DNA of 64,000 nt from Isurus oxyrinchus (Eukaryota): the NCBI GenBank assembly GCA_026770705.1, contig JANJGN010000121.1:930001-994000 (forward strand), in the 5' to 3' direction. Below, piece by piece: positions 3,588 to 64,000 of this stretch (position 1 is its first letter; every line of letters begins with the position of its first letter). Position numbers and translations under genes: made by a program. The notes under the pieces were generated by a model. The model was not told the DNA's origin and made no database searches. It saw only the letters and a program-made list of their open reading frames with translations.

Positions 3588-3683
3588 GTAGAGACTCCAG
3601 TAAATGGACAGTAGGATTGTTCACGGCTGGGATCATGTTGAGTGTTTTCCTGGCTGGAATCTTCATCTTCATCTGTTGAGAAA
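3588..3683 (+). CDS. Gene A: transmembrane exon with premature TGA (3677-3679)
   Basis: tttacag|GT...GAAA|gtaagt. Reads CRDSSKWTVGLFTAGIMLSVFLAGIFIFIC*. It is 96 bp against 97 bp for the gene D paralog (TGT TGA GAA A vs TGT GTG AGA AA). Confidence 0.8.
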
Positions 3684-3716
3684 GTAAGTCTGAGGATTTA
3701 ACTTGATTTTAATATA

Positions 3717-4035: not shown

Positions 4036-4561
4036 ATAATAATCAGTTGCTGTGATCTGGAAGGTGCTGCCTGAAAGGGCGCTGGAAGCAGATTCAATAG
4101 GAACTTTCAAAAGGGTAAATGAATAAATACTTGAAGGGGGAACATTTGAAGGGCTATGGGGGGAAGTGCAGGGGTGGAGGGCGGGTCAAAGATATGGCGT
4201 GTTATTATAATGATATTATACCTTGGGCTTATTTACTGTACAAGAAACAAAGCACCAATCGCTCACAGGGTTTGGGTGAGAATGTTGTCGGTTTGTTTAT
4301 CAAGACTCGGCACGAGAACAGTTATACATACGGATAAAGATTGAAGGCATCAGAGCTGTGAGTGTGTGCTCTGCTCAAAGCAAAAGTGAAACTAAGGTTG
4401 GATCACATGACACACTTCCATTATAGTGATGTCACGCTGATACCCCTTATTGGAACTAGAGACAGTCCAGTCGTTGGTGTAAGGTTACAGTGGGCTCTGT
4501 GTCTGTGCTGCACTGACTCTCTGCTATATGATAACCACAGTGTGATATTGTGTTATTGCAG

Positions 4562-4862: not shown

Positions 4863-7558
4863 ACTGAGGGAGTGCTACACTGTCAGAGGGTCAGTACTGA
4901 GGGAGTGCTGCAATGTCAGAGTGTCAGTACTGAGGGAGTGCTGCACTGTCGGAGGGTCAGTACTGAGGGAGTGCTGCACTGTCAGAGTGTCAGTACTGAG
5001 GGAGTGCTGCACTGTCGGAGGGTCAGTACTGAGGGTGTGTTGCACTGTCAGAGGATCAGTACTGAGGGAGTGCTGCACTGTCGGAGGGTCAGTACTGAGG
5101 GAGTGCTGCACTGTCAGAGGGTCAGTACTGAGGGAGTGCGGGACTGTCAGATGGTCATTACTGAGGGAGTGCTGCACTGTCAGTGGGTCAGTACTGAGGC
5201 AGTACTGCACTGTCGGAGGGTCAGTAGTGAGGGAGTGCTGCACTGTCGGAGGGTCAGTACTGAGGGAGTTGTGCACTGTCAGAGTGTCATTACTGAGGGA
5301 GTGCTGCACTGTCGGAGGGTCAGTACTGAGGGAGTGCTGCACTGTCGGATGATCAGTACTGAGGAAGTGCTGCACTGTCAGCGGGTCAGTACTGAGGGAG
5401 TGCTGGACTGTCAGAGAGTCAGTACTGAGGGAGTGCTGCACTGTCGGAGGGTCAGTAGTGAGGAAGTGCTGCACTGTCAGAGGGTCAGTATTCCGGGAGT
5501 GCTGCACTGTCAGAGGGTCAGTACTGAGGGAGTGCTGCACTGTCAGAGGGTCAGTACTGAGGGAGTGCTGCACTGTCAGAGGGTCAGTAATGAGGGAGTG
5601 CTGCACTGTCAGAGGGTCAGGATTGAGGGAGTGCTGCACTGTCAGAGGGTCAGTATTGAGGGAGTGCTGCACTGTCAGAGGGTCAGTACAGAGGGAGTGC
5701 TGCACTGTCGGAGGGTCGGTACTGCGGGAGTGCTGCACTGTCAGAGGGTCAGTACTGAGGAAGTGCTGCACTGTCAGAGGGTCAGTAGTGAGGGAGTGCT
5801 GCACTGTCAGAGGGTCAGTACTGAGGGAGTGCTGCACTGTCAGAGGGTCAGTAGTGAGGGAGTGCTGCACTGTCAGAGGGTCAGTGCTGAGGGAGTGCTG
5901 CACTGTCAGAGGGTCAGTACTGAGGGAGTGCTGCAATGTCAGAGTGTCAGTACTGAGGGAGTGCTGCACTGTCGGAGGGTCAGCACTGAGGGAGTGCTGC
6001 ACTGTCAGAGGGTCAGTACTGAGGGAGTGCGGGACTGTCAGATGGTCATTACTGAGGGAGTGCTGCACTGTCAGAGGGTCAGTACTGAGGGAGTACTGCA
6101 CTGTCGGAGGGTCAGTAGTGAGGGAGTGCTGCACTGTTGGAGGGTCAGTACTGAGGGAGTTGTGCACTGTCAGAGTGTCATTACTGAGGGAGTGCTGCAC
6201 TGTCGGAGGGTCAGTACTGAGGGAGTGCTGCACTGTCGGATGATCAGTACTGAGGAACTGCTGCACTGTCAGCGGGTCAGTACTGAGGGATTGCTGGACT
6301 GTCAGAGAGTCAGTACTGAGGGAGTGCTGCACTGTCGGAGGGTCAGTAGTGAGGGAGTGCTGCACTGTCAGACGGTCAGTATTTTGGGAGTGCTGCACTG
6401 TCAGAGGGTCAGTATTCCGGGAGTGCTGCACTGTCAGAGGGTCAGTAGTGAGGGTGTGCTGCACTGTCAGAGGGTCAGTATTGAGGTAGTGCTGCACTGT
6501 CAGAGGGTCAGTATTGAGGGAGTGCTGCACTGTCAGGGGGTCACTACTGAGGGAGTGCTGCACTGTCAGAGGGTCAGTACTGAGGGAGTGCTGCACTGTC
6601 AGAGGGGCAGTATTGAGGGAGTGCTGCACTGTCAGAGGGTCAGTATTGAGGGAGTGCTGCACTGTCAGAGGGTCAGTATTGAGGGAGTGCTGCACTGTCA
6701 GAGGGTCAGTACTGAGGGAGTGCTGCACTGTCGGAGGGTCAGTACTGAGGGAGTGCTGCACTGTTAGAGGGTCAGTACTGAGGGAGTGCTGCACTGTCAG
6801 AGGGTCAGTAGTGAGGGAGTGCTACACTGTCAGAGGGTCAGTGCTGAGGGAGTGCTGCACTGTCAGAGGGTCAGTACTGAGGGAGTGCTGCACTGTCAGA
6901 GAGTCAGTAGTGAGGGAGTGCTGCACTGTCAGAGGGTCAGTGCTGAGGGAGTGCTGCACTGTCAGAGGATCAGTACTGAGGGAGTGCTGCACTGTCAGAG
7001 GGTCAGTATTGAGGGAGTGCTGCACTGTCAGAGGGTCAGTACTGAGGGAGTGCTGCACTGTCAGAGGGTCAGTACTGAGGGAGTGCTGCACTGTCAGAGG
7101 GTCAGTACTGAGGGAGTGCTGCACTGTCAGAGGGTCAGTATTGAGGGAGTGCTGCACTGTCAGAGGGTCAGTATTGAGGGAGTGCTGCACTGTCAGAGGG
7201 TCAGTATTGAGGGAGTGCTGCACTGTCAGAGGGTCAGTACTGAGGGAGTGCTGCACTGTCAGAGGGTCAGTAGTGAGGGAGTGCTGCACTTTCAGAGGTT
7301 CAGTACTGAGGGAGTGCTGCACTGTCAGAGAGTCAGTACTGAGGGAGTGCTGCACTGTCAGAGGGTCAGTACTGAGGGAGTGCTGCACTGTCAGAGGGTC
7401 AGTACTGAGGGAGTGCTGCACTGTCAGAGGGTCAGTACTGAGGTAGTGCTGCACTGTCAGAGGGTCAGTATTGAGGGAGTGCTGCACTGTCAGAGGGTCA
7501 GTACTGAGGGAGTGCTGCACTGTCAGAGGGTCAGTATTGAGGGAGTGCTGCACTGTTG
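4863..7558 (+). repeat. 33-bp minisatellite (ACTGAGGGAGTGCTGCACTGTCAGAGGGTCAGT)n, about 80 copies
   Basis: Tandem repeat visible directly; explains the 11-aa repeat ORFs on both strands. Confidence 0.97.
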
Positions 7559-7740
7559 GAGTGCGATAGAGATTAAATTATTAAGAGAGAGAGAAAGCGA
7601 GAGAGAGACAGAGAAAGAGAGTGAAAAAAAGGCTTAAACCCACTGAGACACGACTGACACTAATGAGGCTGCACAATAATTTAACCCTATCAGTGCCAGT
7701 AAATGATGTGAGGATGTCTTCTGTTTCCATTTCTCTGTAG

Positions 7741-14445: not shown

Positions 14446-14699
14446 TGACATGTGTGTCTGTGTGAACGTGTGTGAATGTGTGTGTGTGTACCTGTGTGCA
14501 TGTGTATTGTTGCATCTTTATTATAAATGTTATTTAAAAATAGTGATCACACAAGCCTAGTTTCTAAGGAAATGAAAATGCAAACAATTTACAGTAAAGT
14601 GAAACGTACAGGAATAATCTATTTTGAGCTGATGATATATAATTATACATGATGCATCTTGCTAATTTCAAACATCATCTGAAATATGGTAGGTCTGAC

Positions 14700-15090
14700 A
14701 GAGCAGCATTTTCTCAGTGCTCAGCCTCTGACAGTGCAGCACTCCCTCAGTACTGACCCTCTGACAGTGCAGCACTCCCTCAGTACTGACCCTCTGACAG
14801 TGCAGCATTCCCTCAGCACTCACCCTCCGACAGTGCAGCACTCCCTCATCACTGACCCTCTGACAGTGCAGCACTCCCTCAGTGCTCACCGTCTGACAGT
14901 GCAGCACTCCCTCAGTGCTCACCCTCTGACAGTGCAGCACTCCCTCAGCACTGACCCTCTGGGAGTGCAGCACTCCCTCAGTACTGACCCTCCGACAGTG
15001 CAGCACTCCCTCAGTACTGACCCTCCGACAGTGCAGCACTCCCTCAGTACTGACCTTCCAACAGTGCAGCACTCCCTCAGCACTCCCTCA
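14700..15090 (-). repeat. 33-bp minisatellite (minus strand); the same junction recurs at 16915-17100
   Basis: Tandem units followed by ctccctcactggggaga...ttttga.ctgaaa and GA/GT-rich DNA at both sites. Confidence 0.9.
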
Positions 15091-16224
15091 CTGGGGAGAG
15101 TCCGTCTGCATTTTGAACTGAAACCTTGACATGGTCTCAAAACACCAACCTTCCATCTCGGAGAGAGAGAGTGCGTTTGTGTGTGAGAGAGAGAGACAAT
15201 GTATGTGTGAGAGACTGAGTGTGTATGTGTGAGAGAGCAAAAGAGAGTTAGAGTGTGTGTGCATGAGAGAGGGAGGTAGCTTGTGTGTGTGAGAGAGAGT
15301 GTGTGTGAGAGAAAGAAAATGTCTATGTGAGAGTGAGAGAGAGTATACGTGTGAGAGAGAAAGATAGAGAGAATGTGCGTGTGAGATAGTGTGTGTGCGA
15401 AAGAGAGTGTGTGTCTGTGAGAGAGTGTTTGTGTATGTGAGAGTGTGTGTGTGAGATTGTGTGTGTGTGTGTGTGTTTGAGAGAGAGGGAGATTGTGCGT
15501 TTGAGAGAGGGAGTGAGAGAGAACATGTGTGTGAGAGAGAGAGTGTGTGTGTGTATGTGTGTGTGTGAAAGAGAAAGTGTTTGTGCAAAAGAGTGTGTGT
15601 NNNNNNNNNNNNNNNNNNNNNNNNNNNNNNNNNNNNNNNNNNNNNNNNNNNNNNNNNNNNNNNNNNNNNNNNNNNNNNNNNNNNNNNNNNNNNNNNNNNN
15701 NNNNNNNNNNNNNNNNNNNNNNNNNNNNNNNNNNNNNNNNNNNNNNNNNNNNNNNNNNNNNNNNNNNNNNNNNNNNNNACAGTTTCACACGTTGCTAGGG
15801 ACCACTTTTCCGCCTCTCTGTCAGACTGTGTGTATCTGACAGCAGGTCAGGCAGAAATAGTCCAGAATGCGCTGTGGTTTTGTAGCATTGAAACAACGAC
15901 ATGAACTAAATGAGTGCTGCACCAAATAAAGACATGGAGTTACCACACCAAAAAACCACGTGACTTCCCCAGTTTCACATCTCCCTCAAACACAGAAAAA
16001 CTGGGTTAACACTGACCCTCCTCCCACAGCTAGTTTACCTCGTGTCCGATGCAGTCAGGAGAGGAAGATCATCTCTCCTCCGATCCTGGTAAACTGAACA
16101 TTTCCAGAATTAGATCAGCTCCCTGAAGTGTCTCCAGTTAGTCATTCATCTGACAGGATTGACTCTACAACCCTGGGAACTCATTCTCCTGTAAGTAAAA
16201 CACTTGCTGCTCCTGTCAAATCTC

Positions 16225-20649: not shown

Positions 20650-21110
20650 CCCCCACAAGGGGTAACATCCCCTCAGCATCCACCCTGTCAAACCCCCCAC
20701 CACCTCAGAATCTTATATGTTTCAATAAGATCACCTCTCATTCTTCTAAACTCCAATGGATACAGGGCCCAACCTGCTCAACATTTCCTCACAGGACAAA
20801 CCCCCTTCATCCCAGGAATCAGCCCAGTGATCCTCCTCTGAGCTGCCTCCAATGCAGAGTCTATCCCTCCCTAAGTAAGGAGACCAGAACTGTACACACT
20901 GCTCCTGATACAATCTCACCAACGCCCTGTACAGTTGTAGCAAGACTTCCCTCCTTTTATACTTCATCCCTTTGCAATAAAGGCCAACATTCCACTTGCC
21001 TTCCTCATTCCGTGCTGTTCCTGAATGCTGACTTTCTGTGATTCATGTACAAGGACACCCAGATCCCTCTGTACCGCATTCTGCTGCCTCTCTCCATTGA
21101 AGTAATATTC
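20650..21110 (-). mobile_element. CR1 LINE fragment
   Basis: MKYKRREVLLQLYRALVRLYQEQCVQFWSPYL matches the CR1 ORF2 C-terminus. Confidence 0.85.
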
Positions 21111-21150
21111 TGCTTTTTGATGTCCTGTCTCTTCCCTTGTTGCCTTTCAG

Positions 21151-21437
21151 GAGTGACATCAGAGGGATGGTCTATGAAGGCGCTACCTCGGAGGGCCATC
21201 AGCAGCTCTTGTGTGGTTATTCTGTGTAGCTTTGACTTTCCTTCCCACTCTTACACAGCACTGCACGGAGCTTGGTATAAATATTGGTATAGATGGAAAT
21301 ATACCATCACATACACCAAAGATCCCAACTATGGGGTGGCCACATTCGTGGGACGTGCTAAAATAATCGGCGACTTGGAAGGGAAGAATTGTTTGGTGAG
21401 GATTGACAGTCTCAGAGCTGAAGACAGTGACGTGTAA
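21151..21437 (+). pseudogene. Gene B: divergent Siglec-type V-set exon, truncated before the F strand
   Basis: cctttcag|GA GTG...; VTSEGWSM...SCVVILCSFDFP...GAWYK...GRAKIIGDLEGKNCLVRIDSLRAEDSDV*. Has the Siglec CxxIxC and E-strand NC pattern; Gypsy sequence follows directly. Confidence 0.8.
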
Positions 21438-29010: not shown

Positions 29011-30699
29011 CTTCCTCCCCCTCTCTCTCCTGTACCTCTCTCTCTCTCTCTCCCTCTCCCTCAATCCTCCTCTCACTTTCTCCCTGATAAATTCTTTCTT
29101 TTTGCAGGTTGACACTGCTTTAGGTTCTTCGACGATTGAGAAATCTGTGGATTCCCCGGACACGGTAGGTGGAAATTCATTCCTTATTTTAAGGTTTCTC
29201 CCTGCTCGTTTCTTCCACAGAAAGTTTTCTGATTTCAAGCTGATTTCAGTGGCAGTCTGTCTCGGTTATACTCAGGAGGCATGTTTGAAATCGAGCCCCC
29301 CCCCGCCAACTTTTTTTGCAAAGCTGGGAAGAGGCAATTCCAAGGAAGTGAACATATCCCCACAGGAATTTTAAATGTAACCCACGCCGGGAATAGTGAG
29401 AGGGAGACTGATCCAGCCTGGGAGTGGGTTAAAGAGAGGCTGGGAGTCGAGAGTCGGAGAGAGGGATGGAATGGGGGAGGGAGGGATTGGAAGAGAGAGA
29501 CAGAGAGTGGGACGGGGAGGGGTGAAAGGGAAAGAACATAGGTGGGAGAGAGTGACAGAGGGAGAAATTAAAGAAGAGATGCAGAGTGAGGGAAAGTGAA
29601 AAGGGAAGAGAGATTGTCCAAGAGAGAGAAATTAACAGGAAAGGGAGAGTTACAGAGTGAGCGAAAGTTACAAAAATAGTGTGAGAGAGAGGGAGAGATA
29701 CAGAGGGGGAGAAGGAGACAGGGGAGAGAGAGGGAGAGAGACAGGAAAAGGGAGAGAGGAGAGAAAGATTGGGAGAGAGGGCAATTGAGAGGAAGAGTAG
29801 GAGAGAGAGAGACAGGGAGAGGAGGAGTGGATGAGAGGAAGAGAGAGAGAGATATGGAGCAGGAGAACACCTCCTCCGGTCCCGATGTTCCTCCAAAATC
29901 TCTGACATTACTGCATCTCCCGGGTCCCCCTGATTCCCATCGCTCCACAATTGGCGGCCGTGCCTTCAGCTGCCTGGGGCCCTGAGCTCCGGAATACCCT
30001 CCCTTAACCTCTCTGCCTCTCTCTCTCTCTCCTTTAAGACGCTCCTTAAAAACTGACATCTTTGACCAAGCTTTTGGTCACCTAACCCTAATATCTCCAT
30101 ATGTGACTCAGTGTTAGACTTCTCTCTGATTTACGCTCCGGTAATGTGGGCTGGGACATTTTGCAATGTCAGAGGCGCTGTGTGAATGCAAGTTGTGAGT
30201 GTTATGTGGAAGGGAGACCCCAGGCGGCAGTCAGTGCCAGAGACTGGAGTCATTGTGTACAGACCATATCTAATCTCTCCGAATGCACAATCGATTTGAC
30301 TGTCAGCCAAAGCACTTTTGATATTTGATCCTTCTACCTGTTTATAACCAGGCCTACATCATACACCGAGAGGCTAGTTAATCAACAGACACCTTAGAGG
30401 ATCAAGTGAAAGACAAAGAGGACTTGCATTTCTCTAGCGCCTTCCAACACATCAGGACGTCCCAAAGTGTTTCGCAGACAATCAAGTGCTTTTTTCTTTC
30501 ATGTGAGGTCACTGATGTAATGTGGGAAAAGAATCAGCCATTGGCGCACAGTAAGATCCCACAGACAGCAGCATGATAATGACCAGCGCGCTCCCAGTAC
30601 TTGCACTGCAAGTGTCAGTTCAGGATGTGTACTCGATTCTCTGCGACTCTCATCTCCGAGTTAAAAGGACCACCAGGCGTAATTGAGGAATTACCGAGC

Positions 30700-31390
30700 T
30701 GTCGGAGGGTCAGTACTGAGGGAGTGCTGCACAGTCGGAGGGTCAGTACTGAGGGAGTGCTGCATTGTCAGAGGGTCAGTACTGAGGGAGTGCTGCACTG
30801 TCAGAGGGTCAGTACTGAGGGAGTGCTGCATTGTCAGAGGGTCAGTCTTGAGGGAGTGCTGCACAGTCGAAGGGTCAGTACCGGCGGGGGGATGCACAGT
30901 CGGAGGGTCAGTGCTGAGGGAGTGCAGCCTTGTCAGAGGGTCAGTTTTGAGGGAGTGTTGCACAGTCGGAGGGTCAGTACTGAGGGAGTGTTGCATTGTC
31001 AGAGGGTCAGTCTTGAGGGAGTGTTGCACTGTTGGAGGGTCAGTACTGAGGGTGTGCTACACTGTCAGAGGGTCAGTACTGAGGGAGTGCTGCACTGTTG
31101 GAGGGTCAGTACTGAGGGGGTGCTGCATTGTCAGAGTCAGTACTGAGGGAGTGCTGCACAGTCGGAGGGTCAGTACTGAGGGGGTGCTGCACTGTTGAAG
31201 GCGCTGTCTTTCAGATAAGACATTAAACTGGGGCAACCAATCTGCCCTCTCAGGTGGATGTAGAGGATTCCATGGCCACAATTTAGATGAAGTGCGTCAG
31301 GAGTTGGGGGGTATGTGTGGAGGGGGTGGTGGGGGGTGGATGGGGTGGAGTTATGTCCACTTTCCTGGGGCAAACATTTATCCCTCAACT
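30700..31390 (+). repeat. 33-bp array joined to a Deu-SINE core; further arrays at 32820-33300, 39645-39920, 49205-49795, 60708-60800 and 63600-63790
   Basis: gtgctgcactgttgaaggcgctgtctttcagataagacattaaac...tctgccctctcaggtggatgt follows the last unit. Confidence 0.85.
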
Positions 31391-34009
31391 GACATTGGTA
31401 AAACACTGAAAATGGTCACCATTACTGAGACTAGCTTCGCATTCCAGAAGTCACATCCAGTCGTGGACAATTAAACTGGAGGAGGAGGCTCCACAAATAT
31501 CCCCATCCTCAATGATGGAGGAGTCCAGCACGCCAGTGCAAAAGACAAGACTGAAGCATGCGCAACAAAATGTATCAATCAATTAAATTTATTGATTAAT
31601 CAAATCGAAATTCCTCCAGCTGCCGTGGTGGGATTTGAACCCGTGCCTTCAAAGCATTCACCTGGGCCTCTGGATCACTGGCCTAGTGCCATTCCCATTG
31701 TGCGACTGTCTGCTATCATCATGGCTCTTTCACATCGATGTGGAAGTCCTGATAACAGAAGCATTGGACGAGGTACAGAAAGGTGACAAATCAGGAGCTC
31801 CATTGCTCAATATGAACGGATAATAAAGATAAATGAACATAAACCTTCCAGTCGCTAATTAGGGAGTCACTGTGGAGCCCATGAGTCCCTCGCAGCGCTA
31901 TTGCAACCTTCTGGATCCCCAGTAGGGGACTCGGGGTGCAGCTGTGTCTTCCTCATCATTTGGAAAAGCCGGTATTGTTCGGGTGCCCCTTCAAACAGGC
32001 CGAAGATGCAGTGGGTGATGTCTCCCACAGGCCCTGGGAGACCTCCCCTGCCAATTTGTTTTGTAGCTTATTCTTCAACTGCGACATTGGATCAGCTTGA
32101 AAAAGGGTGAGGCTGAGGCAATACCACCAGGTAAGCGTCTATCCCCTCACACGTCACCCCCCCCCACCCCCGTAACCATCACAGTCCCTCCCATCGTGCT
32201 GGAGGAGCATAATGTGCACATTCCCCTCCTTCCAATCAGTCTCCTCCCTTCCTCTCTAATCCTTGATCTTATTGTGTTCGGGGTTGACATCCCAGTCCTC
32301 CTCCCTAGACTGTCTGATGTTGACATCCCAATGCCCCATGTAGACCTGACCTCTCTCCAACTAGAGGCCCATTGTACTGTGACTTACAGAGACCACCGGC
32401 CCCCCTCGATTCCCACCCCCACCCCTACTCTCTATATTACCTGCTCCCCATTGACCGGCTGCAGATGCCTCCCCTGACTGGGATTGTGCCACCTGCGGCC
32501 TAGTATCAAGCCACCCACCCCCAGGACCGACGTGTGTGAGGGACTGACCACGTCCTGCACACCATGCTGGGCATGACCAACCCAGGACTGCCAGACTGTC
32601 CCCACCACACTGGACTGGGACTAGAATAGGCGTGCCAAGCACAGCTCTCTAAATCGTGGCGCAGACCCACAGCACTCGCAATGTTTTGTGGCCCGAATCC
32701 TTGCTGAGGAACTGCCCAGCACTAAAAGCAAAAAAACTGCAGATGCTGGAAATCCAAAACAGAAACAGAAACAGAAATACCTGGAAAAACTCAGCAGGTC
32801 TGGCAGCATCGGCGGAGAAGTACTGAGGTAGTGCAGCACTGTCGGAGGTTCATTACTGAGGGAGTGCTGCACTGTCAGAGGGTCTGAGCTGAGGGAGTGC
32901 TGCACTGTCGGAGGCTCTGAGCTGAGGGAGTGCAGCACTGTTGGAGGGTTTGAACTGAGGGAGAGCTGCACTGTCGGAGGGTTTGAACTGAGGGAGTGCT
33001 GCACTGTCGGATGGTTTGAACTGAGAGAGTGCTGCACTGTCGGAGGTTCTGAACTGAGGGAGTGCTGCACTGTCTGAGGGTTTGAACTGAGGGAGTGCTG
33101 CACAGTCGGAGGGTCTGAACTGAGGGAGTGCTGCACTGTCGGAGGGTTTGAACTGAGGGAGTGCTGCACTGTCGGAGGGTTTGAACTGAGGGAGTGCTGC
33201 ATTGTCGGAGGGTCTGATCTGAAGGAGTGCTGCACTGTAGGAGGGTCTGAACTGAGGGAGTGCTGCGCTGTTGGAGGGTCAGTACTGAGGGAGTGCTGCG
33301 CTGTCTAAAGAACATTATACAAATTGCACAAAATTGCATGTGATGCCTGTGTCTCATGCTAACATGAAGTTCATGCACACAACAGGAATATTTCTCGCTG
33401 TTTCTCAGCAGCAAGACAGCTTTGATATCACACCAGCCACTGGCAAGAGTGTGCAGCTACAATGTGACATGTTTACATTGGAAATTTCTATTATAAAGAT
33501 GGACAGAGGAATTCATCTGATTGGAAAACGTGACAACATGAAGTAATGTCTTTGAGCCAAGAATTTTGCAGCAAAACAAGAATTTTAATCTTTAAATATC
33601 TACAGAACAGGCTGAGCATTTTAATCACTTGAGTTAATCAATGTAATTTTATTCATAAGCCAAATGCTTCTTACAATCTATCGCAGCATGAAAAAGGTGC
33701 AGCATTCAGAAAGCACATTCTAATCAGAGAACAGAGTTTAGCAACGTCACATTTCTGTTCATTCCTATTCGACCATGTTGGCTGCACACAGCCAGACAAT
33801 ACCGTGGTTATGTTGTGTCCACACAGCAGGACTGGGGAGCACCAGGTATAAGGAAAGGTTTCAGCTTGCTGAGGAGAAGAAGGAGAATCTCTCGTTCCAG
33901 GTTTCTCTCCGTACATTAAGAAGCAGGCATGCCGATGTTTCATTGCACTCTGTCTGCTGATGGGAGTCCGCTTGGAAATTGTTGTTTGTGCTGATGGAAA
34001 GAATAAGCT

Positions 34010-34610
34010 TTTCATAAATGGAGGGATTGAGAACAAACACAGGGAGGTTATGCTGAACATTTATAAAGCTCTGGTTAGGTCACAACTAGAGTATTGTGTC
34101 CAGTTCTGGTGTCCTCACTTTGGGAAGGAAGTGAGGGTCCTTGAGAGGGTGGGGAGGAGATTGAGCAGAATGGGTCCAGGGATGAGGGATTTTAGCTACA
34201 AGGTTGGGTTGGAGAAGCTGGGGTTGTTCTCCTTGGAGCAAAGGAGATTGAGGGGGGATCTGATCGAGGTGTACAATATGATGATGGGTTTAGATAAGGC
34301 AGACAAAGAGAAGCTGTTGCCATTAGCTGATGGTACAAGGACTGGGGGACACAGATTGAAGGATTTGGACAGGGGGTGATGTGAGGAGGAACTTTTTTAC
34401 ACAGCGAGTGGTAATGAGCTGGAACTCGCTGCCTACGAGGATGGTGGAAGCGGAGACGATGAACGATTTCAAAAGGAAATTGGATGGACACTTGAGGGGA
34501 AATAAACTTGAAGGGATACGGGGATAGAGCGGGGGAATGGGACTGACTGGATTGCTTTACAGAGAGACAGCAATGGAGTCGATAGTCCAAATGCCGTCCT
34601 TCTGTTCCAT
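34010..34610 (+). mobile_element. CR1 LINE 3' fragment in the gene C 3' region
   Basis: YKALVRSQLEYCVQFWCPH...LGLFSLEQRRLRGDLIEVY. Confidence 0.9.
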
Positions 34611-34635
34611 GATGAGATTGTTGCTGCACAAATCT

Positions 34636-34775
34636 TCAAACAGTCTGTCGACTTCCTTTCACTGTTTGTCTCTCCCAGACACAGACTCCAGCGATAGTGA
34701 TAACCACAGCCACAAGGAATATCACAGCTCGTATTCCCAGGATCAGGATCACGTGCAGAATCTCTCCTCCACTGT
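34636..34775 (-). CDS. Gene C: terminal TM + short-tail exon with intramembrane Arg (activating-receptor type)
   Basis: ttctctag|AC AGT GGA... phase 1: HSGGEILHVILILGIRAVIFLVAVVITIAGVCVWERQTVKGSRQTV*. A 3'UTR block homologous to that of gene A follows (~33670-33790 vs ~8015-8150). Confidence 0.8.
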
Positions 34776-36445
34776 CTAGAGAACACACAGAAAGAAATCA
34801 TCACTGACTCTCCGCTTTCAATCTCTCACTCTGGCTGAACAATCAAGCTTCATATCACTGCAACATTTGCTGTAATATTGACCCATCCACTGGGATTCAA
34901 TGTGGAATGAATGTTTTCATTGTAAACACTCTAAGAGTGGACAATCGGAACTTTCCCCTTAGCGTGGAACATTGGTGAGAATGGATCATTGTGCTGTTGG
35001 ACTCTCTGTCCAATGTTTCTCTCCATCGCTGTGTACAGGATTGTGCTGTAGAAAATTCTGGAAACGTTTAGTGCAGGGTGGAAATCCATCTCGGACGCGT
35101 GTGCGAATCGGGCAGGATCGAGATGGACTCCCCCATGGACTTACACCCCCCGCTTAATAAACAGTTCCAATCTTTACCCAGAGAGAGGGGAGAATGTGGA
35201 ACTCGCTCCCACAGGGAGTGGTTGAGGTGAACAGTATCGATGTATTTAAGGGGCAGGAGGGTCGGTAACCAGAGGGACACAGATTGACGAACCGGAGGGG
35301 GAGATGAGGAGAATTTGTTTTGACAGAGCGAGTTGTTGTGATCTGGAAGGTGCTGCCTGAAAGGGCAGTGGAAGCAGATTCAATAGGAACTTTCAAAAGG
35401 GAAATTGGATAAACACTTGAAGGAGGAAGATGGGGTAAAGTGGAGTGGTGGTTAGTGGATCTGATGGGATAGAACATTGAAAGACCTGGCACAGGCTCAA
35501 TGGGCTGAATGGCCTCCTCCTGTGCTGTATCATTCTCCGCTTCCATGATCTCTCCCCCAGTCAGTAACCACTCCAGATCCCTCTTGAAGGCAACAGAGCA
35601 ACAGCAACCACCACACCCACTGACAGCACATTCCCGAGGATCCCTACTCTCTGGGAAAAGATGAACTCCCCAACATCCAGCCTATTCCTGCTTCCCGGAG
35701 AGTGTAAACCCTTCAGGGAGGCACCGAGGAAGTTTTCAATAAAATGACATCAAATCCACCGTTTGAGAAATAATTGAATTCCGATGAACTCACAGCTTGT
35801 GTAGCAAACTGGGAAGTAGAGTTGCTGGGAAAGCTGGGAAACACAAGGATGAAGGGCTACAATGCCACCACTGGTGGGAGGCTGTAACTACAGCGTGACG
35901 TTTACATAGGCAGTCATCATTATAAACAGGGGCATTGGACATAATGGGAATTATGTGCACGGAAATAGTGAGAACATTATGTAAGCTTTTCACCAGCAGG
36001 AATTCTCTTCCTAAACCTCTCCAACTCTCTCTTACTCTCAGATACACAAAGAAAATCACACAGAATCAGATAAGGAAGAATTAGGTTGGTGATTCGTCAA
36101 AGGGTTAGGTTTCAGGAAGCTTCTTAAAGGGAGAGAGAGAGAGTTGGAGACGCAGAGAGTATCTGTGAGAGCCTCTATGCATCTGAGTGTCTGTAACAGT
36201 AATTTCCATATTCTTCCATAAATATGAATGGGAACACAAATCCCAGAATTCAGGCCAACTCTCCAGTGCAGTACTGAGGGAGGTCAGGTAACCCATGAGG
36301 GAGTGAGTGTTAGTGTTTGTGTGTGAGTGTGTCTTTGTGTGTGGTCATATATGTGTGTGTGCACGTGTCTATTTAGGTGTGTATGTTCGATGGTGTTTGT
36401 GTAGTGTTCAAATCTGAGAGAGATGTTGAAGTCTGTGTAACTCAC

Positions 36446-36598
36446 GTTCCACAGTGATGGTTATGAACCCATCCACTGCTCCATGTTCTTTCTCTGCCAC
36501 ACACTGATAGTCTCCAGTGTCCCTGGATGTAACGTGAGGAATCACCAACCACAGCTCATTGTTGGAACTTGTTCTGTTCATTTGGACATTCAGATGTC
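36446..36598 (-). pseudogene. Gene C: 3' half of a 282-bp C2 exon; the 5' half is replaced by unrelated DNA
   Basis: Matches the paralogous exon from ...HLNVQMNRT to TVE with an intact gtgagt donor; homology breaks at 36598. Confidence 0.85.
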
Positions 36599-36921
36599 AT
36601 GGCAGGAATCAAGAAGCCCGTTCACAGGATTACCAACAGAAAGTGAACCACAATTTATACTTAATGGGAAGAGAGTGCTGATTGGTTGGCAAGTGGTCTC
36701 TGATAGGTGGAGGTGTTGCCATGGAGAATGGTGTGTGCGAGATGTAAAGTTTAGACAGCTTGTCTCTTCATTCAGCAATAATCAAATAAAGATCAATTAA
36801 CTTCTATCGACTTTGAAGCACTTAGAGAGGCCTTAGAATGTGGATACTGAGAACGGGCTGCACTGTCAGAGGGTCTGCGCTGAGGGAGTGCTGATGTAGA
36901 ATGAAAGGTGTATGTACTTAC

Positions 36922-37218
36922 CTTGTACAGTTAGTACGAGGGTCCGCTCCGATGAAACAGATGGATATCTCACTCTGCAGCTGAGAGTGTGTCCATGGTG
37001 TTTGAGTGATGGGATCAGGGTCAGAACAGAAGTATAGGTCAGAGAGACACCATGCTGAGTTACAGTGTTTGAGACTGATCCAGGTACGTCAGTGGGAGTG
37101 TCCCAGGTTAAGACAGGTGCTGCTGTTCCATTGCACGTTGTGTTGAAGGTGCAGCTTACATCCACACGCTTTCCTGCAATAATTTCAGCAGGGAATATCG
37201 TGGGTTTATCTGTGAAAT
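36922..37218 (-). CDS. Gene C: Siglec domain-2 C2-set exon (open)
   Basis: ctgttag|AT TTC ACA GAT AAA CCC...GTA CAA G|gtaagt; 297 bp. DFTDKPTIFPAEIIAGKRVDVSCTFNTTCNGTAAPVLTW...LSCRVRYP, with the extra Cys typical of Siglec D2. Confidence 0.88.
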
Positions 37219-38075
37219 CTAACAGACAGAGAATGGATCCTTTTCGACAAATATAACGTGAAGCATCAGTTCAAATAGAAACCACAGTCCCACAAGAGAA
37301 AGCACTTTTACAAGGATGATATCAGAACTGAGAGGTTACAATGATCAGGAAAGATTTTCTTGCTCTTTGGCAGTAGTGTTTCTGTCTCTCAGCTTAATAC
37401 ACGTTCACTCCGAGACATGTGAATTGAGAACACTGGATGAGAGAAGAGGCTCAGACCAGAGATTGGAGTTAAAAGCAGAATACTGCGGATGCTGGAAATC
37501 TGAAACAAAAACAAAAATCGCTGGAAAGACTCAGCAGGTCTGACAGTATCAGTGGAGAGGAAGACAGGGTTAACGTTTTGAGTCCGTATGACTCTTCATC
37601 AGACCAGAGGTTTGAGTTCACTGGCTTCTCATTTCCTCAGTGATCTGGGTGATTTATCACCTTGTGGTTTGTTGGATCTTGCTGTGCACAAACTGCCTGC
37701 TGTGTTTTACATCTGTGACTACAATTCAGGAATAATTTCATTGGCTGTGAAGGGATTTGGATCCTCCTGAGGTGGTAAATTGCGCTGCAGAAATGCACAT
37801 CTTTCTTTTATCGATAAGTCAGACTTTTAAACAGGACAGGAGAGATTGATGGGTGTGGTAACCTGAGAATACAGTTAATGCTTTTCATCAGTGATACTAA
37901 AGTGAGTATTAGAGGTTGCTTTAGGACTGATCTGGAAGCCATCACCAGGTTATTGACAATCAGACAGTGTGTTATAATAAGCTGTGTTTTGTGTTAATAT
38001 GTAAATGTCACAGTTTGTGTTATTTCCATTGAGTGCTGAATGTGAATTGTTGAGTAATTATAACACAGCACTTAC

Positions 38076-38452
38076 CAGAAACGTGAAGCTGGGTTACAGG
38101 ATAGTAGCTTTAACTATTCCTGCTGTCAAATTCTACTCTGAAAAAAATAAGGTCCTGCATCTTTCCGTCTGATGTTGTTTATAATCAGGGAACAGTCGCC
38201 ATCTTTCAGGTCTCCAGACAGCCGGGTACGATGGCGGAATCTTTGATCCCTGTGACTGTGACCCTCGGAGTGAAAGGCTATAGACCATATAGGCTGTAGG
38301 GTTCCCATCTATTCCTTTCAACCAGATTCCGACACGTGATCTCCCTACGAAATGTGATGATTAACTGTAATGACATGGAATCTGTACACAGGAACCTTCC
38401 TGCGCTGCCACCTCTCGTGGAGTGTCGCCTTTCCACTCTTGTGACAGTCCAA
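38076..38452 (-). pseudogene. Gene C: Siglec V-set exon with stops and frameshifts
   Basis: Same splice sites as 51232-51597; SCVQIPCHYS* (TAA for TAT), several indels, and a further TAA near the 3' end. Confidence 0.88.
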
Positions 38453-39153
38453 CTGGAGAGAGAAATGTCAATATTTAACTCTGGAAGGTTTGTAGATCCA
38501 CTAGACTCGATATCCACCCCCTCCATCACTGGGGCACAGTGGCTGCAGTGTGGACCATCTACAGGACACACATGGAACTCCCCAAGGTTTCACAATGGAT
38601 GGAAGAGAATCCTGGACAAGGAGTGGACAAGTTCATTCTACATTGGCTCATGGTCCTCAGGACCCTGTTTAGTGAAGCCAGTCTTCCACCCAACACAGTG
38701 TCTACAAGATACACAGAGAAACTGTGTAAACATCTCATCTCTCTAAACTGACTGGCTTGGCTTCAGTTTAACTTTCAGTATTTTTAAATTTCCATATTGT
38801 GGTTGCTATGGTGAAACTGTGCAGGAAGAGTGAGGGCTGGACACTCTGTCTATTCTCACTGCAGCTGTGATGTGGCCGTGGTGATTGTCAGTAAAATGAA
38901 ACCCTCTGAGCTCCTCCATCCCCGAGGTTTAGGGAGTGAATTCCAGAGCTCAGGTCCCAGGCAGCTGAAGGCACGGCCGCCAGTATTGGAGTGATGGGAA
39001 TCGGGGGATGGTCAAGAGGCCGGAATTGGAGTAACACAGAGATCTGGGACGTTGTTTGGTTGAGTTGCAGGAGGTTTCAGAGATTAAGAGATAAGAATGA
39101 TCTTTTACAAAGACTGTTAAACATAAATCTGTCTGAGCTGATGATGATATTAC

Positions 39154-39192
39154 CTTGGGAAAGTGACAAGAGGAAGTAGATTTCCCGATCAT
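39154..39192 (-). pseudogene. Gene C: leader exon, 1 bp short (39 vs 40 bp)
   Basis: Paralog of 55081-55120; restoring one A gives MIGKIYFLLSLSQG. Confidence 0.75.
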
Positions 39193-40379
39193 CGTCCACT
39201 CCCAGATATTCCATCCACTTCTCACTCTCAAACTGTGAAAGAGAAAGGAGTTAATGAGACCTCACCTCTTGTCCGACAGCTCTCGAGAGATCAGAGCTGC
39301 TTTTAGACAATGTCTTCACAGACTAATTTGATTCTCTGTGGGATGATAGGTGCTCTGCAGAGAGTGACAAGGCTTTAAGAAAGAAGAACATTGAAGGATT
39401 TGCATTTCTATAGCACCTTTCACCACCTCAAGACGCTCATGTTTTGAGATCTTGGTGAACTGTTAACCGTTTGTGTCCTGACCCTGTGGTGATATTTCTG
39501 CTCAGAGGTGGACAGTCATTGACCAGGAGTTTCTCCTGTGGGTCAGTGGGTTTCACAGCCAAATTCAGGGGCTCAGAACATTGTGGGATTCAAGACCCCA
39601 TTCAGGGGACGTCTGCCCCACAGAGTAGACTGAAACTCCCCAGTGTCAGTACTGAGCAAGTGCTGCACTGTCGGATGGTCATTACTGAGCAAGTGTTGCA
39701 CTATTGTAAGGTCAGTACTGAGGGGGATCTCCACTGTTGGAGGGTCAGGACTGAGGGAGTGCTGCACTGTCAGAGGGACATTTATCAGGGAGTGCTGCAC
39801 TGTTGGAGGGTCAGTATTGAGGGAATACTGCACTGTCAGAGGAACATTAATCAGGGAGTGCTGCACTGTTAGAGGATCAGTACTGAGGGAGTGCCGCACT
39901 GTTGAAGGGTCAGTATTAAGGTGCTGATTTAGAAGACAGGACAATGTATTAGGAGCCCTCAGAACTTCCCCCGTGATTTCCAATCGATCCGTTACTTACC
40001 CAGGACCTGTCTGACTGCTCGCCTGGGGAGGAACTGCCCACACGCTCTGCTTGGGCTGAATGGGCCTCCTCCTGTTCCTGTGTAACAGGCTTGATGGGGC
40101 TGAATGGGCCTCCTCCTATTCCTGTGTAACAGGCTTGAGGGGGCTGAATGGGCCTCCTCCTGTTCCTGTGTTATAGGCTCGAGGGGCTGAGTGGGCCTCC
40201 TCCTGTTCCTGTGTAACAGGCTTGAGGGGGCTGAATGGGCCTCCTCCTGTTCCTGTGTTATAGGCTCGAGGGGCTGAGTGGGCCTCCTCCTGTTCCTGTG
40301 TAAAAGGCTAAAGGGGCTGAATTGGCCTTCCCCAGTTCCTGTGTACCAGGCTCGAGTACATTAGGAGCATCATTGGAAG

Positions 40380-49072: not shown

Positions 49073-49916
49073 CTAAAAACAAATAAACATCAATTAAGTT
49101 ACACTGACTGTGAAGCACTTTGAAAGACACTGAGAATGTGAAAGGTTTGATATCAATATAGGTTCTTTCACCACAAAGCCCATAATCCAGCCAGACACCT
49201 CAGTTCAGTACTGAGGGTGTGCTGCACTGTGGGAGGGTCAGTACTGAGGGAGTGCTGCACTGTCAGAGGGTCAGTACTGAGGGAGTGCTGTACTGTCGGT
49301 GGGTAAGTACTGAGGGAGTGCTGCACTGTCAGAGAGTCAGTACTGAGGGAGTGCTGCACTGTCAGAGGTTCAGTACATAGGGACTGCTGCACTGTCTGAT
49401 GGTCAGTACAGAGGGGTTGCTGCACTGTCGGAGGGTCAGAAATGAGGATGTGCTGCACTCTCAGAAGGTCAGTACTGAGTGGGTGCTGCACTGTCGAAGA
49501 GTCATTACTGAGGGGGTGCTGCACTGTGGGAGGGTCAGTACTGAGGGAGCACTGCACTGTTGAAGGGTCAGTACTGAGGGAGTGCTGCACTGTCGAAGGG
49601 TCAGTACTGAGGGAGTGCTGCACTGTTAGAGGGTCAGTACAGAGGGAGTGCTGCACTGTCAGAGGGTCAGTACTGAGGGAGCACTGCACTGTTGAAGGGT
49701 CAGTACTGAGGGAGTGCTGCACTGTCAAAGGGTCAGTACTGAGGGAGTGCTGCAGTGTTGGAGAGTCAGTATTCAAGGACTGCTGCAGTGTCAGAGGCGG
49801 ATTTGTATCAGTTAAAGACTATTGATTTGTTGCTAAACACAATGCAGTTGTGGGATCTTGCAGTGTACTATGTAGAGCATTCTAGCTAATGTAGATGGAA
49901 GGGTGTCTGTTCTTAC

Positions 49917-63296: not shown

Positions 63297-64000
63297 CTAC
63301 AGAGAAATGGAAACAGAAGACATCCTCACATCATTTACTGGCACTGATAGGGTTAAATTATTGTGCAGACTCGTTAATGTCAATCATGTCTCAGTGGGTT
63401 TAACCCTCTCCCTCGCTTGGCCTAAATAGCCAAGTGGTAATGTTACTGGGTTTGTAACCCCAAGATCAAGAGTTCAAATCTCACAATGGCAAGCTATGAA
63501 ACAATATAACCTCAACTGAAAAAGATCAAAACAAGTTTGTATTCAAAAGAGTTAACCTTCTCTCTCATGTCATATGAAAGATACCACCTATGGTAGGGCA
63601 GCACTCCCACAGTACTGACCCTCCGACAGTGCAGCACTCCCTCAGTACTGACCCTCTGACAGTGCAGCGCTCACTCAGTACTGACCCTCTGACAGTGCAG
63701 CACTCCCTCAGTACTGACACTCCGACAGTGCAACTCTCCCTCAGTACTGACCCTCTGACTGTGCAGCACTCCCTCAGTACTGACCCTCTGTCAGTCTTGC
63801 ACTCCCTCGGTAATGGCTCTGGTGAGTGACAGTTGGATTCTGCACTCAAGTGTCTGGTGTGAAGCTCATTAACATGCACCTTGTAATCAGAGAGAGGATG
63901 AGAGAGAGAGAAAGAGAGAGAGAGAGAAAGAAAGGGAGGTTGGGATAGAGAGAGAGACTGTCATGATGCGATTAATAAATATCATGTTATTGGAAATTAT

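What the first reader, a model, noticed from the sequence alone, without database searches (positions are those of the whole stretch)
34636..34775. Hidden activating-type TM exon with an intramembrane arginine
This frame is not in the ORF track. In the phase set by the upstream C2 donor it reads HSGGEILHVILILGI-R-AVIFLVAVVITIAGVCVW-ERQTVKGSRQTV*: a basic residue inside the helix, with TM and short tail in one terminal exon and no Tyr. Known: a TM Arg or Lys mediates pairing with ITAM adaptors DAP12 or FcR-gamma (Siglec-14/15/16, LILRA). It is unrelated in sequence to the A and D TM exons. The host gene C is pseudogenised here, as often happens to activating members of receptor pairs.
Basis: partly seen in the sequence, partly recalled or inferred. 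Interest (0 to 1): 0.8.

Follow-up and report, generated by a model that had tools for sequence, protein, structure and literature searches.

The report
Shark activating-type membrane anchor exon
This is a real, spliced last exon that gives shark Siglec-like immune receptors a membrane anchor with a buried arginine and almost no tail, the usual build of an activating receptor, but here it sits in a gene whose front half is dead.

Summary
Minus-strand 34775-34636 follows an AG acceptor and encodes a stalk, a 26-residue helix with Arg at helix position 8 (codon 34731-34729), a 12-residue tail without Tyr, and a stop.

It is not a chance frame:
- Contigs of two RNA-like runs from two studies join 34775 to 36922 with GT..AG ends.
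- The peptide hits shark proteins at E down to 7e-14 among 1.84 billion.
- Arg and the core ILGIRA.IF are invariant in 16 of 16 sequences from Siglec/CD33-like, CD22-like and SLAM-like receptors.

- The RNA partner is the C2a donor at 36922, giving Asp. It is not the truncated C2b relic, which would give His.
- The exon is not hidden. RefSeq models in eight sharks carry it, including intact leader-V-C2a-TM proteins of Scyliorhinus canicula.

Gene C is indeed broken here: leader frameshift, two stops and two frameshifts in V, and a half-deleted C2b.

Adaptor pairing is inferred only. This scan met the same kind of cassette twice before on other DNA of this genome (s1-300793, s1-868598). It is a new member of a known kind, of moderate interest.

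The parts
34636..34775 (-). Coding part of the terminal exon: junction codon, SGGEILH stalk, TM helix 34752-34675 (VILILGIRAVIFLVAVVITIAGVCVW), Arg codon CGA at 34731-34729, tail ERQTVKGSRQTV, stop TGA at 34638-34636
   Evidence: Sequence and ORF. Hydropathy. RNA joint at 34775. Homologues.
34776..36921 (-). Intron removed in RNA: GT at 36921-36920, AG at 34777-34776. It contains the skipped C2b relic.
   Evidence: Joint 34775->36922, skips 2146, + strand ends CT..AC, in X4 (1 contig, depth 399.5, side 31) and X17 (1 contig, depth 86.8, side 161). It is absent in X8 and X10, whose contigs run colinear across 34775.
36922..37218 (-). C2a (C2-set) exon of gene C: open, 297 nt, phase 1 in and out. 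It is the exon actually spliced to the TM exon.
   Evidence: Sequence. Continuous 99-aa tblastn matches of 86-97% to shark proteins. RNA contig X17 record 9 covers 36922-37219.
36446..36598 (-). Relic of a C2b exon: only the 3' half is left and the donor is intact. It is skipped by the RNA joint.
   Evidence: Homology to the intact C2b exons starts at 36598. Sequence. Reads over it run on into intact paralogous C2b sequence (loose end at 36598).
38076..38452 (-). V-set exon of gene C, dead: TAA at 38363-38361, 10-nt insertion at 38307-38298, an extra T at about 38147, TAA at 38112-38110
   Evidence: Alignment with the gene D V exon. tblastn split over three frames with stops.
39154..39192 (-). 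Leader exon of gene C with a 1-nt deletion. It reads MIGKSTSSCHFPK instead of MIGKSYFLLSLLQ, so the signal peptide and the phase are lost.
   Evidence: Sequence. Alignment with the gene D leader at 55120-55082. tblastn of the S. canicula leader hits only D.
33601..34635 (-). 3' UTR of the terminal exon, as far as the RNA contig reaches. ATTAAA lies at 33625 and AATAAA at 33653 on the minus strand.
   Evidence: X17 record 9 continues 34615-34775 plus 33601-33991. Motif scan.
33992..34614 (+). 5'-truncated LINE-like fragment inside the 3' UTR, antisense to the gene, with a reverse-transcriptase-tail-like ORF at 33960-34379. It is absent from the X17 RNA contig.
   Evidence: Joint 33991->34615 with non-canonical ends TG..TG in X17. 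Very high repeat depth at 34022-34543 in X8. The left junction is colinear in X4, X8 and X10. ORF. No Pfam hit. The reverse-transcriptase likeness is my own reading of the ORF.

Best explanation
34775-34636 (minus strand) is the last coding exon of a two-Ig-domain Siglec-like receptor gene (leader, V, C2a, TM). It is a copy of a conserved shark cassette that supplies a short stalk, a membrane helix with an arginine about eight residues in from the outer face, and a 12-residue tail with no tyrosine.

Shown:
- The exon is spliced, GT..AG and in frame, to the C2a exon at 36922.
- The same cassette, with invariant Arg, ends Siglec/CD33-like, CD22-like and SLAM-like receptors in eight shark species.
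- Sister genes with similar ectodomains end instead in an uncharged helix plus long tails.
- In this assembly the gene's leader, V exon and second C2 exon are broken, so this copy cannot make a receptor from its own start codon.

Inferred: in intact copies the buried Arg pairs with an acidic residue in the helix of a separate signalling chain (ITAM or similar). That would turn ligand binding into activation and make surface expression depend on that chain. Which chain is unknown.
For: - Splicing: the joint 34775->36922 has GT..AG ends in two RNA-like runs from two studies. In X4 the spliced contig has depth 399.5 against 48.3 for the colinear one. An 850-nt X17 contig reads C2a + TM exon + 3' UTR with 13 other letters in all.
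- Frame: 1+297 nt leaves G, and G+AC = Asp, as in ...TVQDSGGE of the P0001, P0012 and P0018-P0020 proteins.
- Homology: 10 hits at E<=0.001 among 1.84 billion proteins, and 9 of them carry the cassette. The closest is Carcharodon carcharias at 44 of 46 residues.
- Arg and ILGIRA.IF are invariant in 13 of 13 aligned sequences. By my reading of the matched stretches they also hold in the 3 further cassette proteins that a cassette HMM picked out of 104 stored proteins (15 matches at E<=1.5e-19, next best 0.15). That makes 16 of 16.
- Names and domains of the carriers.
- Pairing of forms: P0020 (Arg helix) and P0033 (uncharged helix, 68-residue tail) are 75% identical up to ...LTVQ and then diverge. 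Both list the same longest-contig length, 1,818,738. In the window, gene D matches gene C at 82-92% nucleotide identity over V and C2a but has an uncharged TM exon.
- Lesions in gene C.
Against: - No adaptor was identified or tested, and no tool here can show association.
- A 2014 survey found no FcR-gamma homologue in the shark genomes then available (PMC4016189, passages).
- X4 and X17 are labelled RNA only as a guess, and all the evidence comes from assembled contigs, not raw reads.
- The RNA comes from an organism coded B that differs from the window by about 1.5%. It may be another individual, a sister species or a near-identical paralogue, so expression of this exact copy is not proven.
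- X17 shows no coverage of gene C's V exon, so the upstream exon of that transcript is unknown.
- The cassette hits were found by similarity to a query that holds the Arg, which favours Arg-bearing hits.
Confidence: 0.72

Rival explanations
1. The exon is real and conserved, but the Arg does not dock an ITAM chain. It could pair with a DAP10-like YxxM chain or another membrane partner, act as an ER-retention or quality-control signal, or tune helix position. The receptor would then not be a classical activating one.
For: No adaptor was found or tested. PMC4016189 (passages) reported no FcR-gamma in the sharks surveyed in 2014. The tails end in -TV in several species, which hints at another kind of partner. 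That this resembles a PDZ-binding consensus is recalled, not tested.
Against: Strict invariance of Arg and its neighbours across three unrelated ectodomain families, with short Tyr-free tails and paired uncharged long-tailed sisters, is the pattern of adaptor-coupled receptors in other vertebrates (established knowledge, recalled). The -TV ending is not kept in the carpet-shark versions.
Confidence: 0.17
2. The window's copy is a silent relic. The spliced RNA contigs come from a near-identical intact paralogue or from another species, not from this locus.
For: The RNA contig differs from the window at 13 of 850 letters. Earlier notes report similar Arg exons on two other stretches of this genome. 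Gene C's 5' exons are dead.
Against: The non-coding 3' UTR piece matches at 383 of 391 letters. DNA-like contigs of other coded organisms at this very locus differ by a similar amount, 8 of 505 and 5 of 480 letters. That fits an orthologous or allelic origin. In X4 the V exon region of gene C is covered about tenfold above the neighbouring intron bins.
Confidence: 0.1
3. It is a chance open frame with a hydrophobic run in intergenic or repeat DNA.
For: The ORF is only 50 codons and lies between two copies of a repeat.
Against: The exact GT..AG splice in two runs, E=7.2e-14 among 1.84 billion proteins, and a position about 1.7 kb downstream of the nearest upstream Ig exon (the C2b relic), a spacing similar to the 0.8-1.2 kb seen in genes A and D.
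Confidence: 0.01

Closest known systems
Carcharodon carcharias 'sialic acid-binding Ig-like lectin 12' (P0018, P0019) and 'CD33-like' (P0020) RefSeq models
   Same: Same cassette. 44 of 46 residues are identical in P0018/P0019 and 42 of 46 in P0020. They share the ...TVQ-D-SGGE junction after a C2a domain that is 89-97% identical to the window's across the white-shark models.
   Different: Their N-termini are incomplete models. P0018/P0019 carry two V domains. The window's gene has a dead leader and V exon.
Scyliorhinus canicula 'Siglec-13' (P0012, 272 aa) and 'Siglec-14 isoform X2' (P0013, 273 aa)
   Same: Intact leader-V-C2a-TM(Arg) build. The cassette is 82% identical, the helix core is the same, and the V domain keeps the F-R-I motif.
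   Different: The tail stops after ERRTV (5 residues) instead of 12. A different shark order (recalled taxonomy). The names are automatic and do not imply orthology with the human genes.
The same cassette on CD22-like and SLAM-family-like shark receptors (P0004, P0005, P0011; P0007, P0009)
   Same: ILGIRA.IF core, C-terminal position and short Tyr-free tail.
   Different: Unrelated ectodomains. This implies exon shuffling or shared descent of the last exon only.
Mammalian paired Siglecs such as Siglec-5/Siglec-14
   Same: The logic: near-identical lectin ectodomains, one with an inhibitory tail and one with a charged helix and a short tail (PMC4042635, search listing and start of abstract only; the rest is recalled).
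   Different: No sequence likeness of the helix to any mammalian receptor was detected: no Pfam family reached its curated cut-off and no PDB chain matched. The adaptor is known in mammals and unknown in sharks. The origins are probably independent.

Membership tests
Shark TM-Arg terminal-exon cassette (ILGIRA core) | Significant sequence similarity over the whole exon | tested here: met
   E=7.2e-14 to 3.9e-4 for 9 of the 10 hits. 44 of 46 residues identical to the white-shark models.
Shark TM-Arg terminal-exon cassette (ILGIRA core) | Invariant Arg in the ILGIRA.IF context | tested here: met
   13 of 13 sequences in the alignment. Also seen in the matched stretches of the 3 further cassette proteins, making 16 of 16.
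Shark TM-Arg terminal-exon cassette (ILGIRA core) | Last coding exon, phase-1 acceptor, spliced to an Ig exon | tested here: met
   Joint 36922->34775 and a contig running on into the 3' UTR. The cassette is C-terminal in 14 of 15 database proteins; P0010 is a mis-model.
Adaptor-coupled activating immunoreceptors (Siglec-14/15/16, LILRA, activating KIR type) | Basic residue inside the membrane helix | tested here: met
   Arg at position 8 of a 26-residue helix.
Adaptor-coupled activating immunoreceptors (Siglec-14/15/16, LILRA, activating KIR type) | Short cytoplasmic tail without ITIM, ITSM or Tyr | tested here: met
   ERQTVKGSRQTV, 12 residues, no Tyr.
Adaptor-coupled activating immunoreceptors (Siglec-14/15/16, LILRA, activating KIR type) | Sister gene with a similar ectodomain and an inhibitory-type tail | tested here: met
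   Gene D matches at 82-92% nucleotide identity over V and C2a and has an uncharged TM. P0020 and P0033 are 75% identical up to the exon border. The motifs in the tails of D, A and E were not checked by me.
Adaptor-coupled activating immunoreceptors (Siglec-14/15/16, LILRA, activating KIR type) | Physical and functional dependence on a chain with an acidic membrane residue | not testable with these tools
   No adaptor sequence was at hand. The literature searches gave nothing on shark adaptors except a negative 2014 survey.
Siglecs (sialic-acid-binding Ig lectins) | N-terminal V-set domain with the ligand-binding Arg, in a readable frame | tested here: not met
   In gene C the V exon has two stops and two frameshifts, and the AGA codon of the F-R-[IV]-E motif is out of frame. 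Gene D and P0012/P0013 keep it.
Siglecs (sialic-acid-binding Ig lectins) | C2-set domain(s) after the V domain | tested here: met
   The gene C C2a exon is open and 86-97% identical to C2a of shark Siglec-like proteins. Its gene D counterpart hits Pfam C2-set_2 at E=7.8e-7.

The most novel reading that the evidence does not exclude
Two half-dead neighbours make one live gene. Gene D, upstream on the same strand, has an intact leader and lectin ectodomain but a stop in its own TM exon. Gene C has dead 5' exons but intact, spliced C2a and Arg-helix exons.

In run X17 the C2a-TM transcript (depth 86.8) comes with no coverage at all of gene C's V exon. Its upstream exons may therefore be gene D's, joined by read-through splicing. 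That would convert a former inhibitory-type lectin into an activating one. The phases fit: the D donors are phase 1.
Probability: 0.08. Interest if true: 0.6.

Novelty: new member of a known kind. Interest (0 to 1): 0.4.

Why it matters
The finding shows that cartilaginous fish use the paired-receptor design: similar lectin heads on either an inhibitory tail or a charged, tailless anchor. They use one conserved anchor exon that is shared by at least three receptor families across three shark orders.

This gives a concrete handle for finding the shark signalling chain. Use the invariant ILGIRA.IF helix of an intact copy as bait. It also helps date when adaptor-coupled activation arose.

This particular copy adds little beyond that. 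It is a recently decayed member, and annotation pipelines already model the cassette in other sharks.

Tried and rejected
Tried without result:
- Pfam on the exon gave only sub-threshold noise.
- The PDB sequence search gave 0 hits at E<=10.
- The ESM Atlas gave a best score of 0.80 to unnamed clusters, which is uninformative.
- The search of earlier findings by sequence was blank. The word search 'ITAM adaptor aspartate transmembrane' was also blank.
- Six literature searches found no paper on shark activating Siglecs or shark DAP12/FcR-gamma. So I found nothing in print in that library. The library lacks most subscription journals, and I opened no supplements.
- PMC4016189 and 10.1101/046789 were read only as passages. 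The second held nothing relevant.

Rejected:
- A chance ORF.
- The C2b relic as splice partner.
- The 623-nt skip 33991->34615 as an intron. Its ends are non-canonical and it coincides with a repeat. I found no clean target-site duplication, so insertion versus deletion stays open.
- Reads over the C2b relic as evidence for its use. They continue into intact paralogous C2b sequence.

Not done:
Each exon was searched on its own.
So there is no DNA-level comparison or dN/dS.

Full report
**What is there**

On the minus strand, a pyrimidine-rich tract and an AG (34777-34776) precede an open frame that runs from 34775 to a TGA at 34638-34636. From 34773 it reads SGGEILHVILILGIRAVIFLVAVVITIAGVCVWERQTVKGSRQTV*. 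That is a short stalk, a 26-residue hydrophobic stretch (34752-34675) with one Arg (CGA, 34731-34729) at its eighth position, and a 12-residue tail without Tyr.

The best 21-residue hydropathy mean is 2.95. Only 13 segments in all six frames of the 64-kb window reach 2.4, and roughly half of those are Cys/Val-rich microsatellite translations by my reading. The exon has no other copy in the window.

**Its setting**

The window holds a cluster of Siglec-like genes:
- Gene A (+ strand): C2b exons at 648-2775 and a TM exon near 3611.
- Gene B (+ strand): V exon at 21045-21437.
- Gene C (- strand).
- Gene D (- strand): leader 55120-55082, V 51616-51152, C2a about 50202-49918, C2b exons near 49082 and 47700, TM 46143-46047.
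- Gene E (- strand): tail exon near 62010-61731.

Gene C is a copy of gene D over V (82% nucleotide identity), C2a (92%) and the 3' half of one C2b exon (96%). The similarity ends there, and the region 34500-35270 is unique. The A and D helices (VGLFTAGIMLSVFLAGIFIFI and AGLLGAGICLSVGLSGFFIF) carry no internal charge.

**Is the exon used?**

I gave look-up of sequencing runs 34570-34860. Twenty of the 24 listed runs, from 12 studies, hold part of it. I laid four of the 24 (X4, X17, X8, X10) on 33500-38700 at 90% likeness.

- X4 and X17 are labelled RNA by a guess. They are the same coded organism B and come from two studies. Each has one contig joining 34775 to 36922. The joint skips 2146 letters with + strand ends CT..AC, which is GT..AG on the gene's strand.
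- In X17 the contig is 850 nt. It reads 37219-36922, then 34775-34615, then 33991-33601, with 3, 2 and 8 other letters respectively.
- In X4 the spliced contig has depth 399.5. A contig colinear across the acceptor (34723-35366) has depth 48.3.
- X8 and X10 show no joint, and their contigs run colinear through 34775. They behave as DNA.

The frame fits. The C2a exon is 297 nt and phase 1 in and out. Its last base G plus AC gives Asp, so the protein reads ...LVLTVQ-D-SGGEILHV....

All of this rests on assembled contigs. Strand, ends and expression level cannot be read from them.

**Relatives**

I searched the exon alone and joined no spliced model at any step.

- Against 1.84 billion representative proteins, the 45-residue peptide gave 10 hits at E<=0.001. 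One (P0008) is a low-complexity repeat protein. The other nine carry the cassette, eight of them at the very C-terminus (P0010 is a mis-joined model).
- Their source names and Pfam domains put them in three kinds of receptor:
  - Siglec/CD33/sialoadhesin-like: Scyliorhinus torazame, Chiloscyllium punctatum, C. plagiosum, Rhincodon typus.
  - CD22-like: C. punctatum, Hemiscyllium ocellatum.
  - SLAM-family-like: S. torazame, Mustelus asterias. This third label rests on the source name of one of the two proteins (the other is a 'hypothetical protein') and on generic Ig-domain Pfam hits.
- A region search with P0001 added two complete 272/273-aa Scyliorhinus canicula proteins, leader-V-C2a-TM.
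- A whole-protein search with P0012 gave 95 relatives at E<=1e-20 out of 611 candidates.
- I built an HMM from 12 cassette pieces and ran it over all 104 stored proteins. It found 15 at E<=1.5e-19, and the next best was 0.15. Eleven of those match by construction. The independent ones are P0010 and three Carcharodon carcharias models (P0018, P0019, P0020).
- Seven of the 95 relatives carry the cassette.
- The white-shark models are the closest. They are 44 of 46 (P0018/P0019) and 42 of 46 (P0020) identical to the window's exon, with the same ...TVQ-D-SGGE junction. C2a is 97% identical to other white-shark models and 93-95% to two of the four basking-shark models checked, the other two matching at about 90%. 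I therefore take the window to be from a mackerel shark or a close relative. That order assignment is recalled taxonomy, not a call.
- ILGIRA.IF and the Arg are invariant in the 13 aligned sequences and in the three further ones. P0004 and P0011 are near-duplicates.
- Among the 103 stored proteins scanned for helices (all 104 but P0008), 65 have a TM-like segment. An Arg well inside it occurs only in the 15 cassette proteins and in one ray protein, P0091. The other charged residues sit at the helix edge.

**Paired forms**

White-shark P0020 (Arg helix, 270 aa) and P0033 (uncharged helix plus a 68-residue tail) are 75% identical up to ...LTVQ and unrelated after it. Both list the same longest-contig length. 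S. canicula P0013 and P0021 are 81% identical over the same span. In the window, C and D stand in the same relation.

**State of gene C**

- The leader has lost one base relative to D. It reads MIGKSTSSCHFPK, and its 39 nt no longer leave phase 1.
- The V exon (38452-38076) has TAA at 38363-38361, a 10-nt insertion at 38307-38298, an extra T at about 38147 and TAA at 38112-38110. tblastn needs three frames to follow it.
- The C2b exon lacks its 5' half.
- C2a and the TM exon are intact.

So this copy cannot make a receptor from its own start. The decay looks recent. Two base substitutions to TAA cannot be assembly indel errors.

Whether organism B carries the same lesions cannot be read. In X4 the V-exon bins have depth 462-828 against about 50-60 in the intron bins. 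In X17 they are 0, although the C2a-TM contig has depth 86.8. The exon upstream of C2a in X17 is therefore unknown, which leaves room for the chimera reading given in the section on the most novel reading.

**How it most likely works**

Shown: anchor exon, buried invariant Arg, short signal-less tail, splice to an Ig exon, shared use by three receptor families, and sister genes with uncharged helices and long tails.

Inferred from what is established for mammalian, bird and bony-fish activating receptors (recalled): the Arg docks to an acidic residue in the helix of a dimeric signalling chain, without which the receptor is poorly expressed and silent.

The chain cannot be named. Nothing in the window encodes one, I had no adaptor sequence to search with, and the only relevant passage I found says that no FcR-gamma homologue was found in the shark genomes of 2014 (PMC4016189). 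I put the adaptor mechanism at about two in three, and the structural reading (real cassette exon in a decayed gene) at about nine in ten.

**Compared with what is known**

The logic is that of Siglec-5/Siglec-14 and other paired receptors. For PMC4042635 I saw only the search listing and the start of the abstract. Membership in any mammalian family is not claimed: there is no sequence likeness of the helix to Pfam or PDB entries.

The cassette itself is already in automatic RefSeq models, some of them even named 'Siglec-14'. This scan noted cassettes of the same description twice before on other DNA of this genome: s1-300793, 'reused by three shark receptor families', and s1-868598, 'two-domain receptor, 12-residue tail'. 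I reached the same points independently from this exon. I could not compare their sequences with mine.

I found no paper on the subject in six searches.

**Verdict**

It is a new member of a known kind, of moderate interest.

No supplements were consulted.

Noticed in passing
33992-34614: A 623-nt LINE-like fragment sits in the 3' UTR, 22 nt after the stop. It is missing from the X17 RNA contig (non-canonical ends TG..TG), while contigs of X4, X8 and X10 run colinear across its left junction. This looks like an insertion or deletion difference between individuals or species. I found no clean target-site duplication.
   Followed up: partly
37850-38700 (V exon of gene C) in run X17: There is zero contig depth here although the C2a-TM contig of the same run has depth 86.8. 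In X4 the same bins reach 462-828. The exon upstream of C2a in X17 is unknown.
   Followed up: no
about 3588-3690, + strand (gene A TM exon): The helix ends ...IFIFIC followed by TGA. White-shark and basking-shark proteins read ...IFICVRK there. It looks like a one-base loss that makes a stop and changes the exon's phase.
   Followed up: no
I saw it directly in the sequence.
   Followed up: partly
34650-34636 (tail end) and proteins P0001, P0002, P0012, P0013, P0018, P0019: The tail ends in -QTV or -RTV, and in the window RQTV occurs twice (ERQTV-KGS-RQTV). This resembles a class I PDZ-binding ending (recalled consensus). It is not kept in P0020 or in the carpet-shark versions, which end -KGS or -KGN.
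   Followed up: no
protein P0091 (Hypanus sabinus, named Siglec-10 by its source): A stingray relative has a different helix with an internal Arg (ILLISLAVRGVLFLLATVAVIWL) and an 11-residue tail. The charged-helix form may predate the shark-ray split, or it may have arisen twice.
   Followed up: no
55120-55082, - strand: The gene D leader encodes MIGKSYFLLSLLQ, identical in 13 of 13 residues to the leader of S. canicula P0012 and of several white-shark and basking-shark models.
   Followed up: partly
4872-7637, 14668-15129, 30601-31198, 32621-33414, 39471-39983, 49168-49825, 63565-63879: Long minisatellite arrays of one family are scattered between the receptor genes on both strands. They read ...PLTVQHSLSTD... 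in one frame and ...GVLHCQRVSTE... in another.
   Followed up: no
34346-34498 and 35274-35423: Two same-strand copies (73% identity) of a repeat flank the TM exon. Further copies lie at 4045-4145 and 54404-54334.
   Followed up: no
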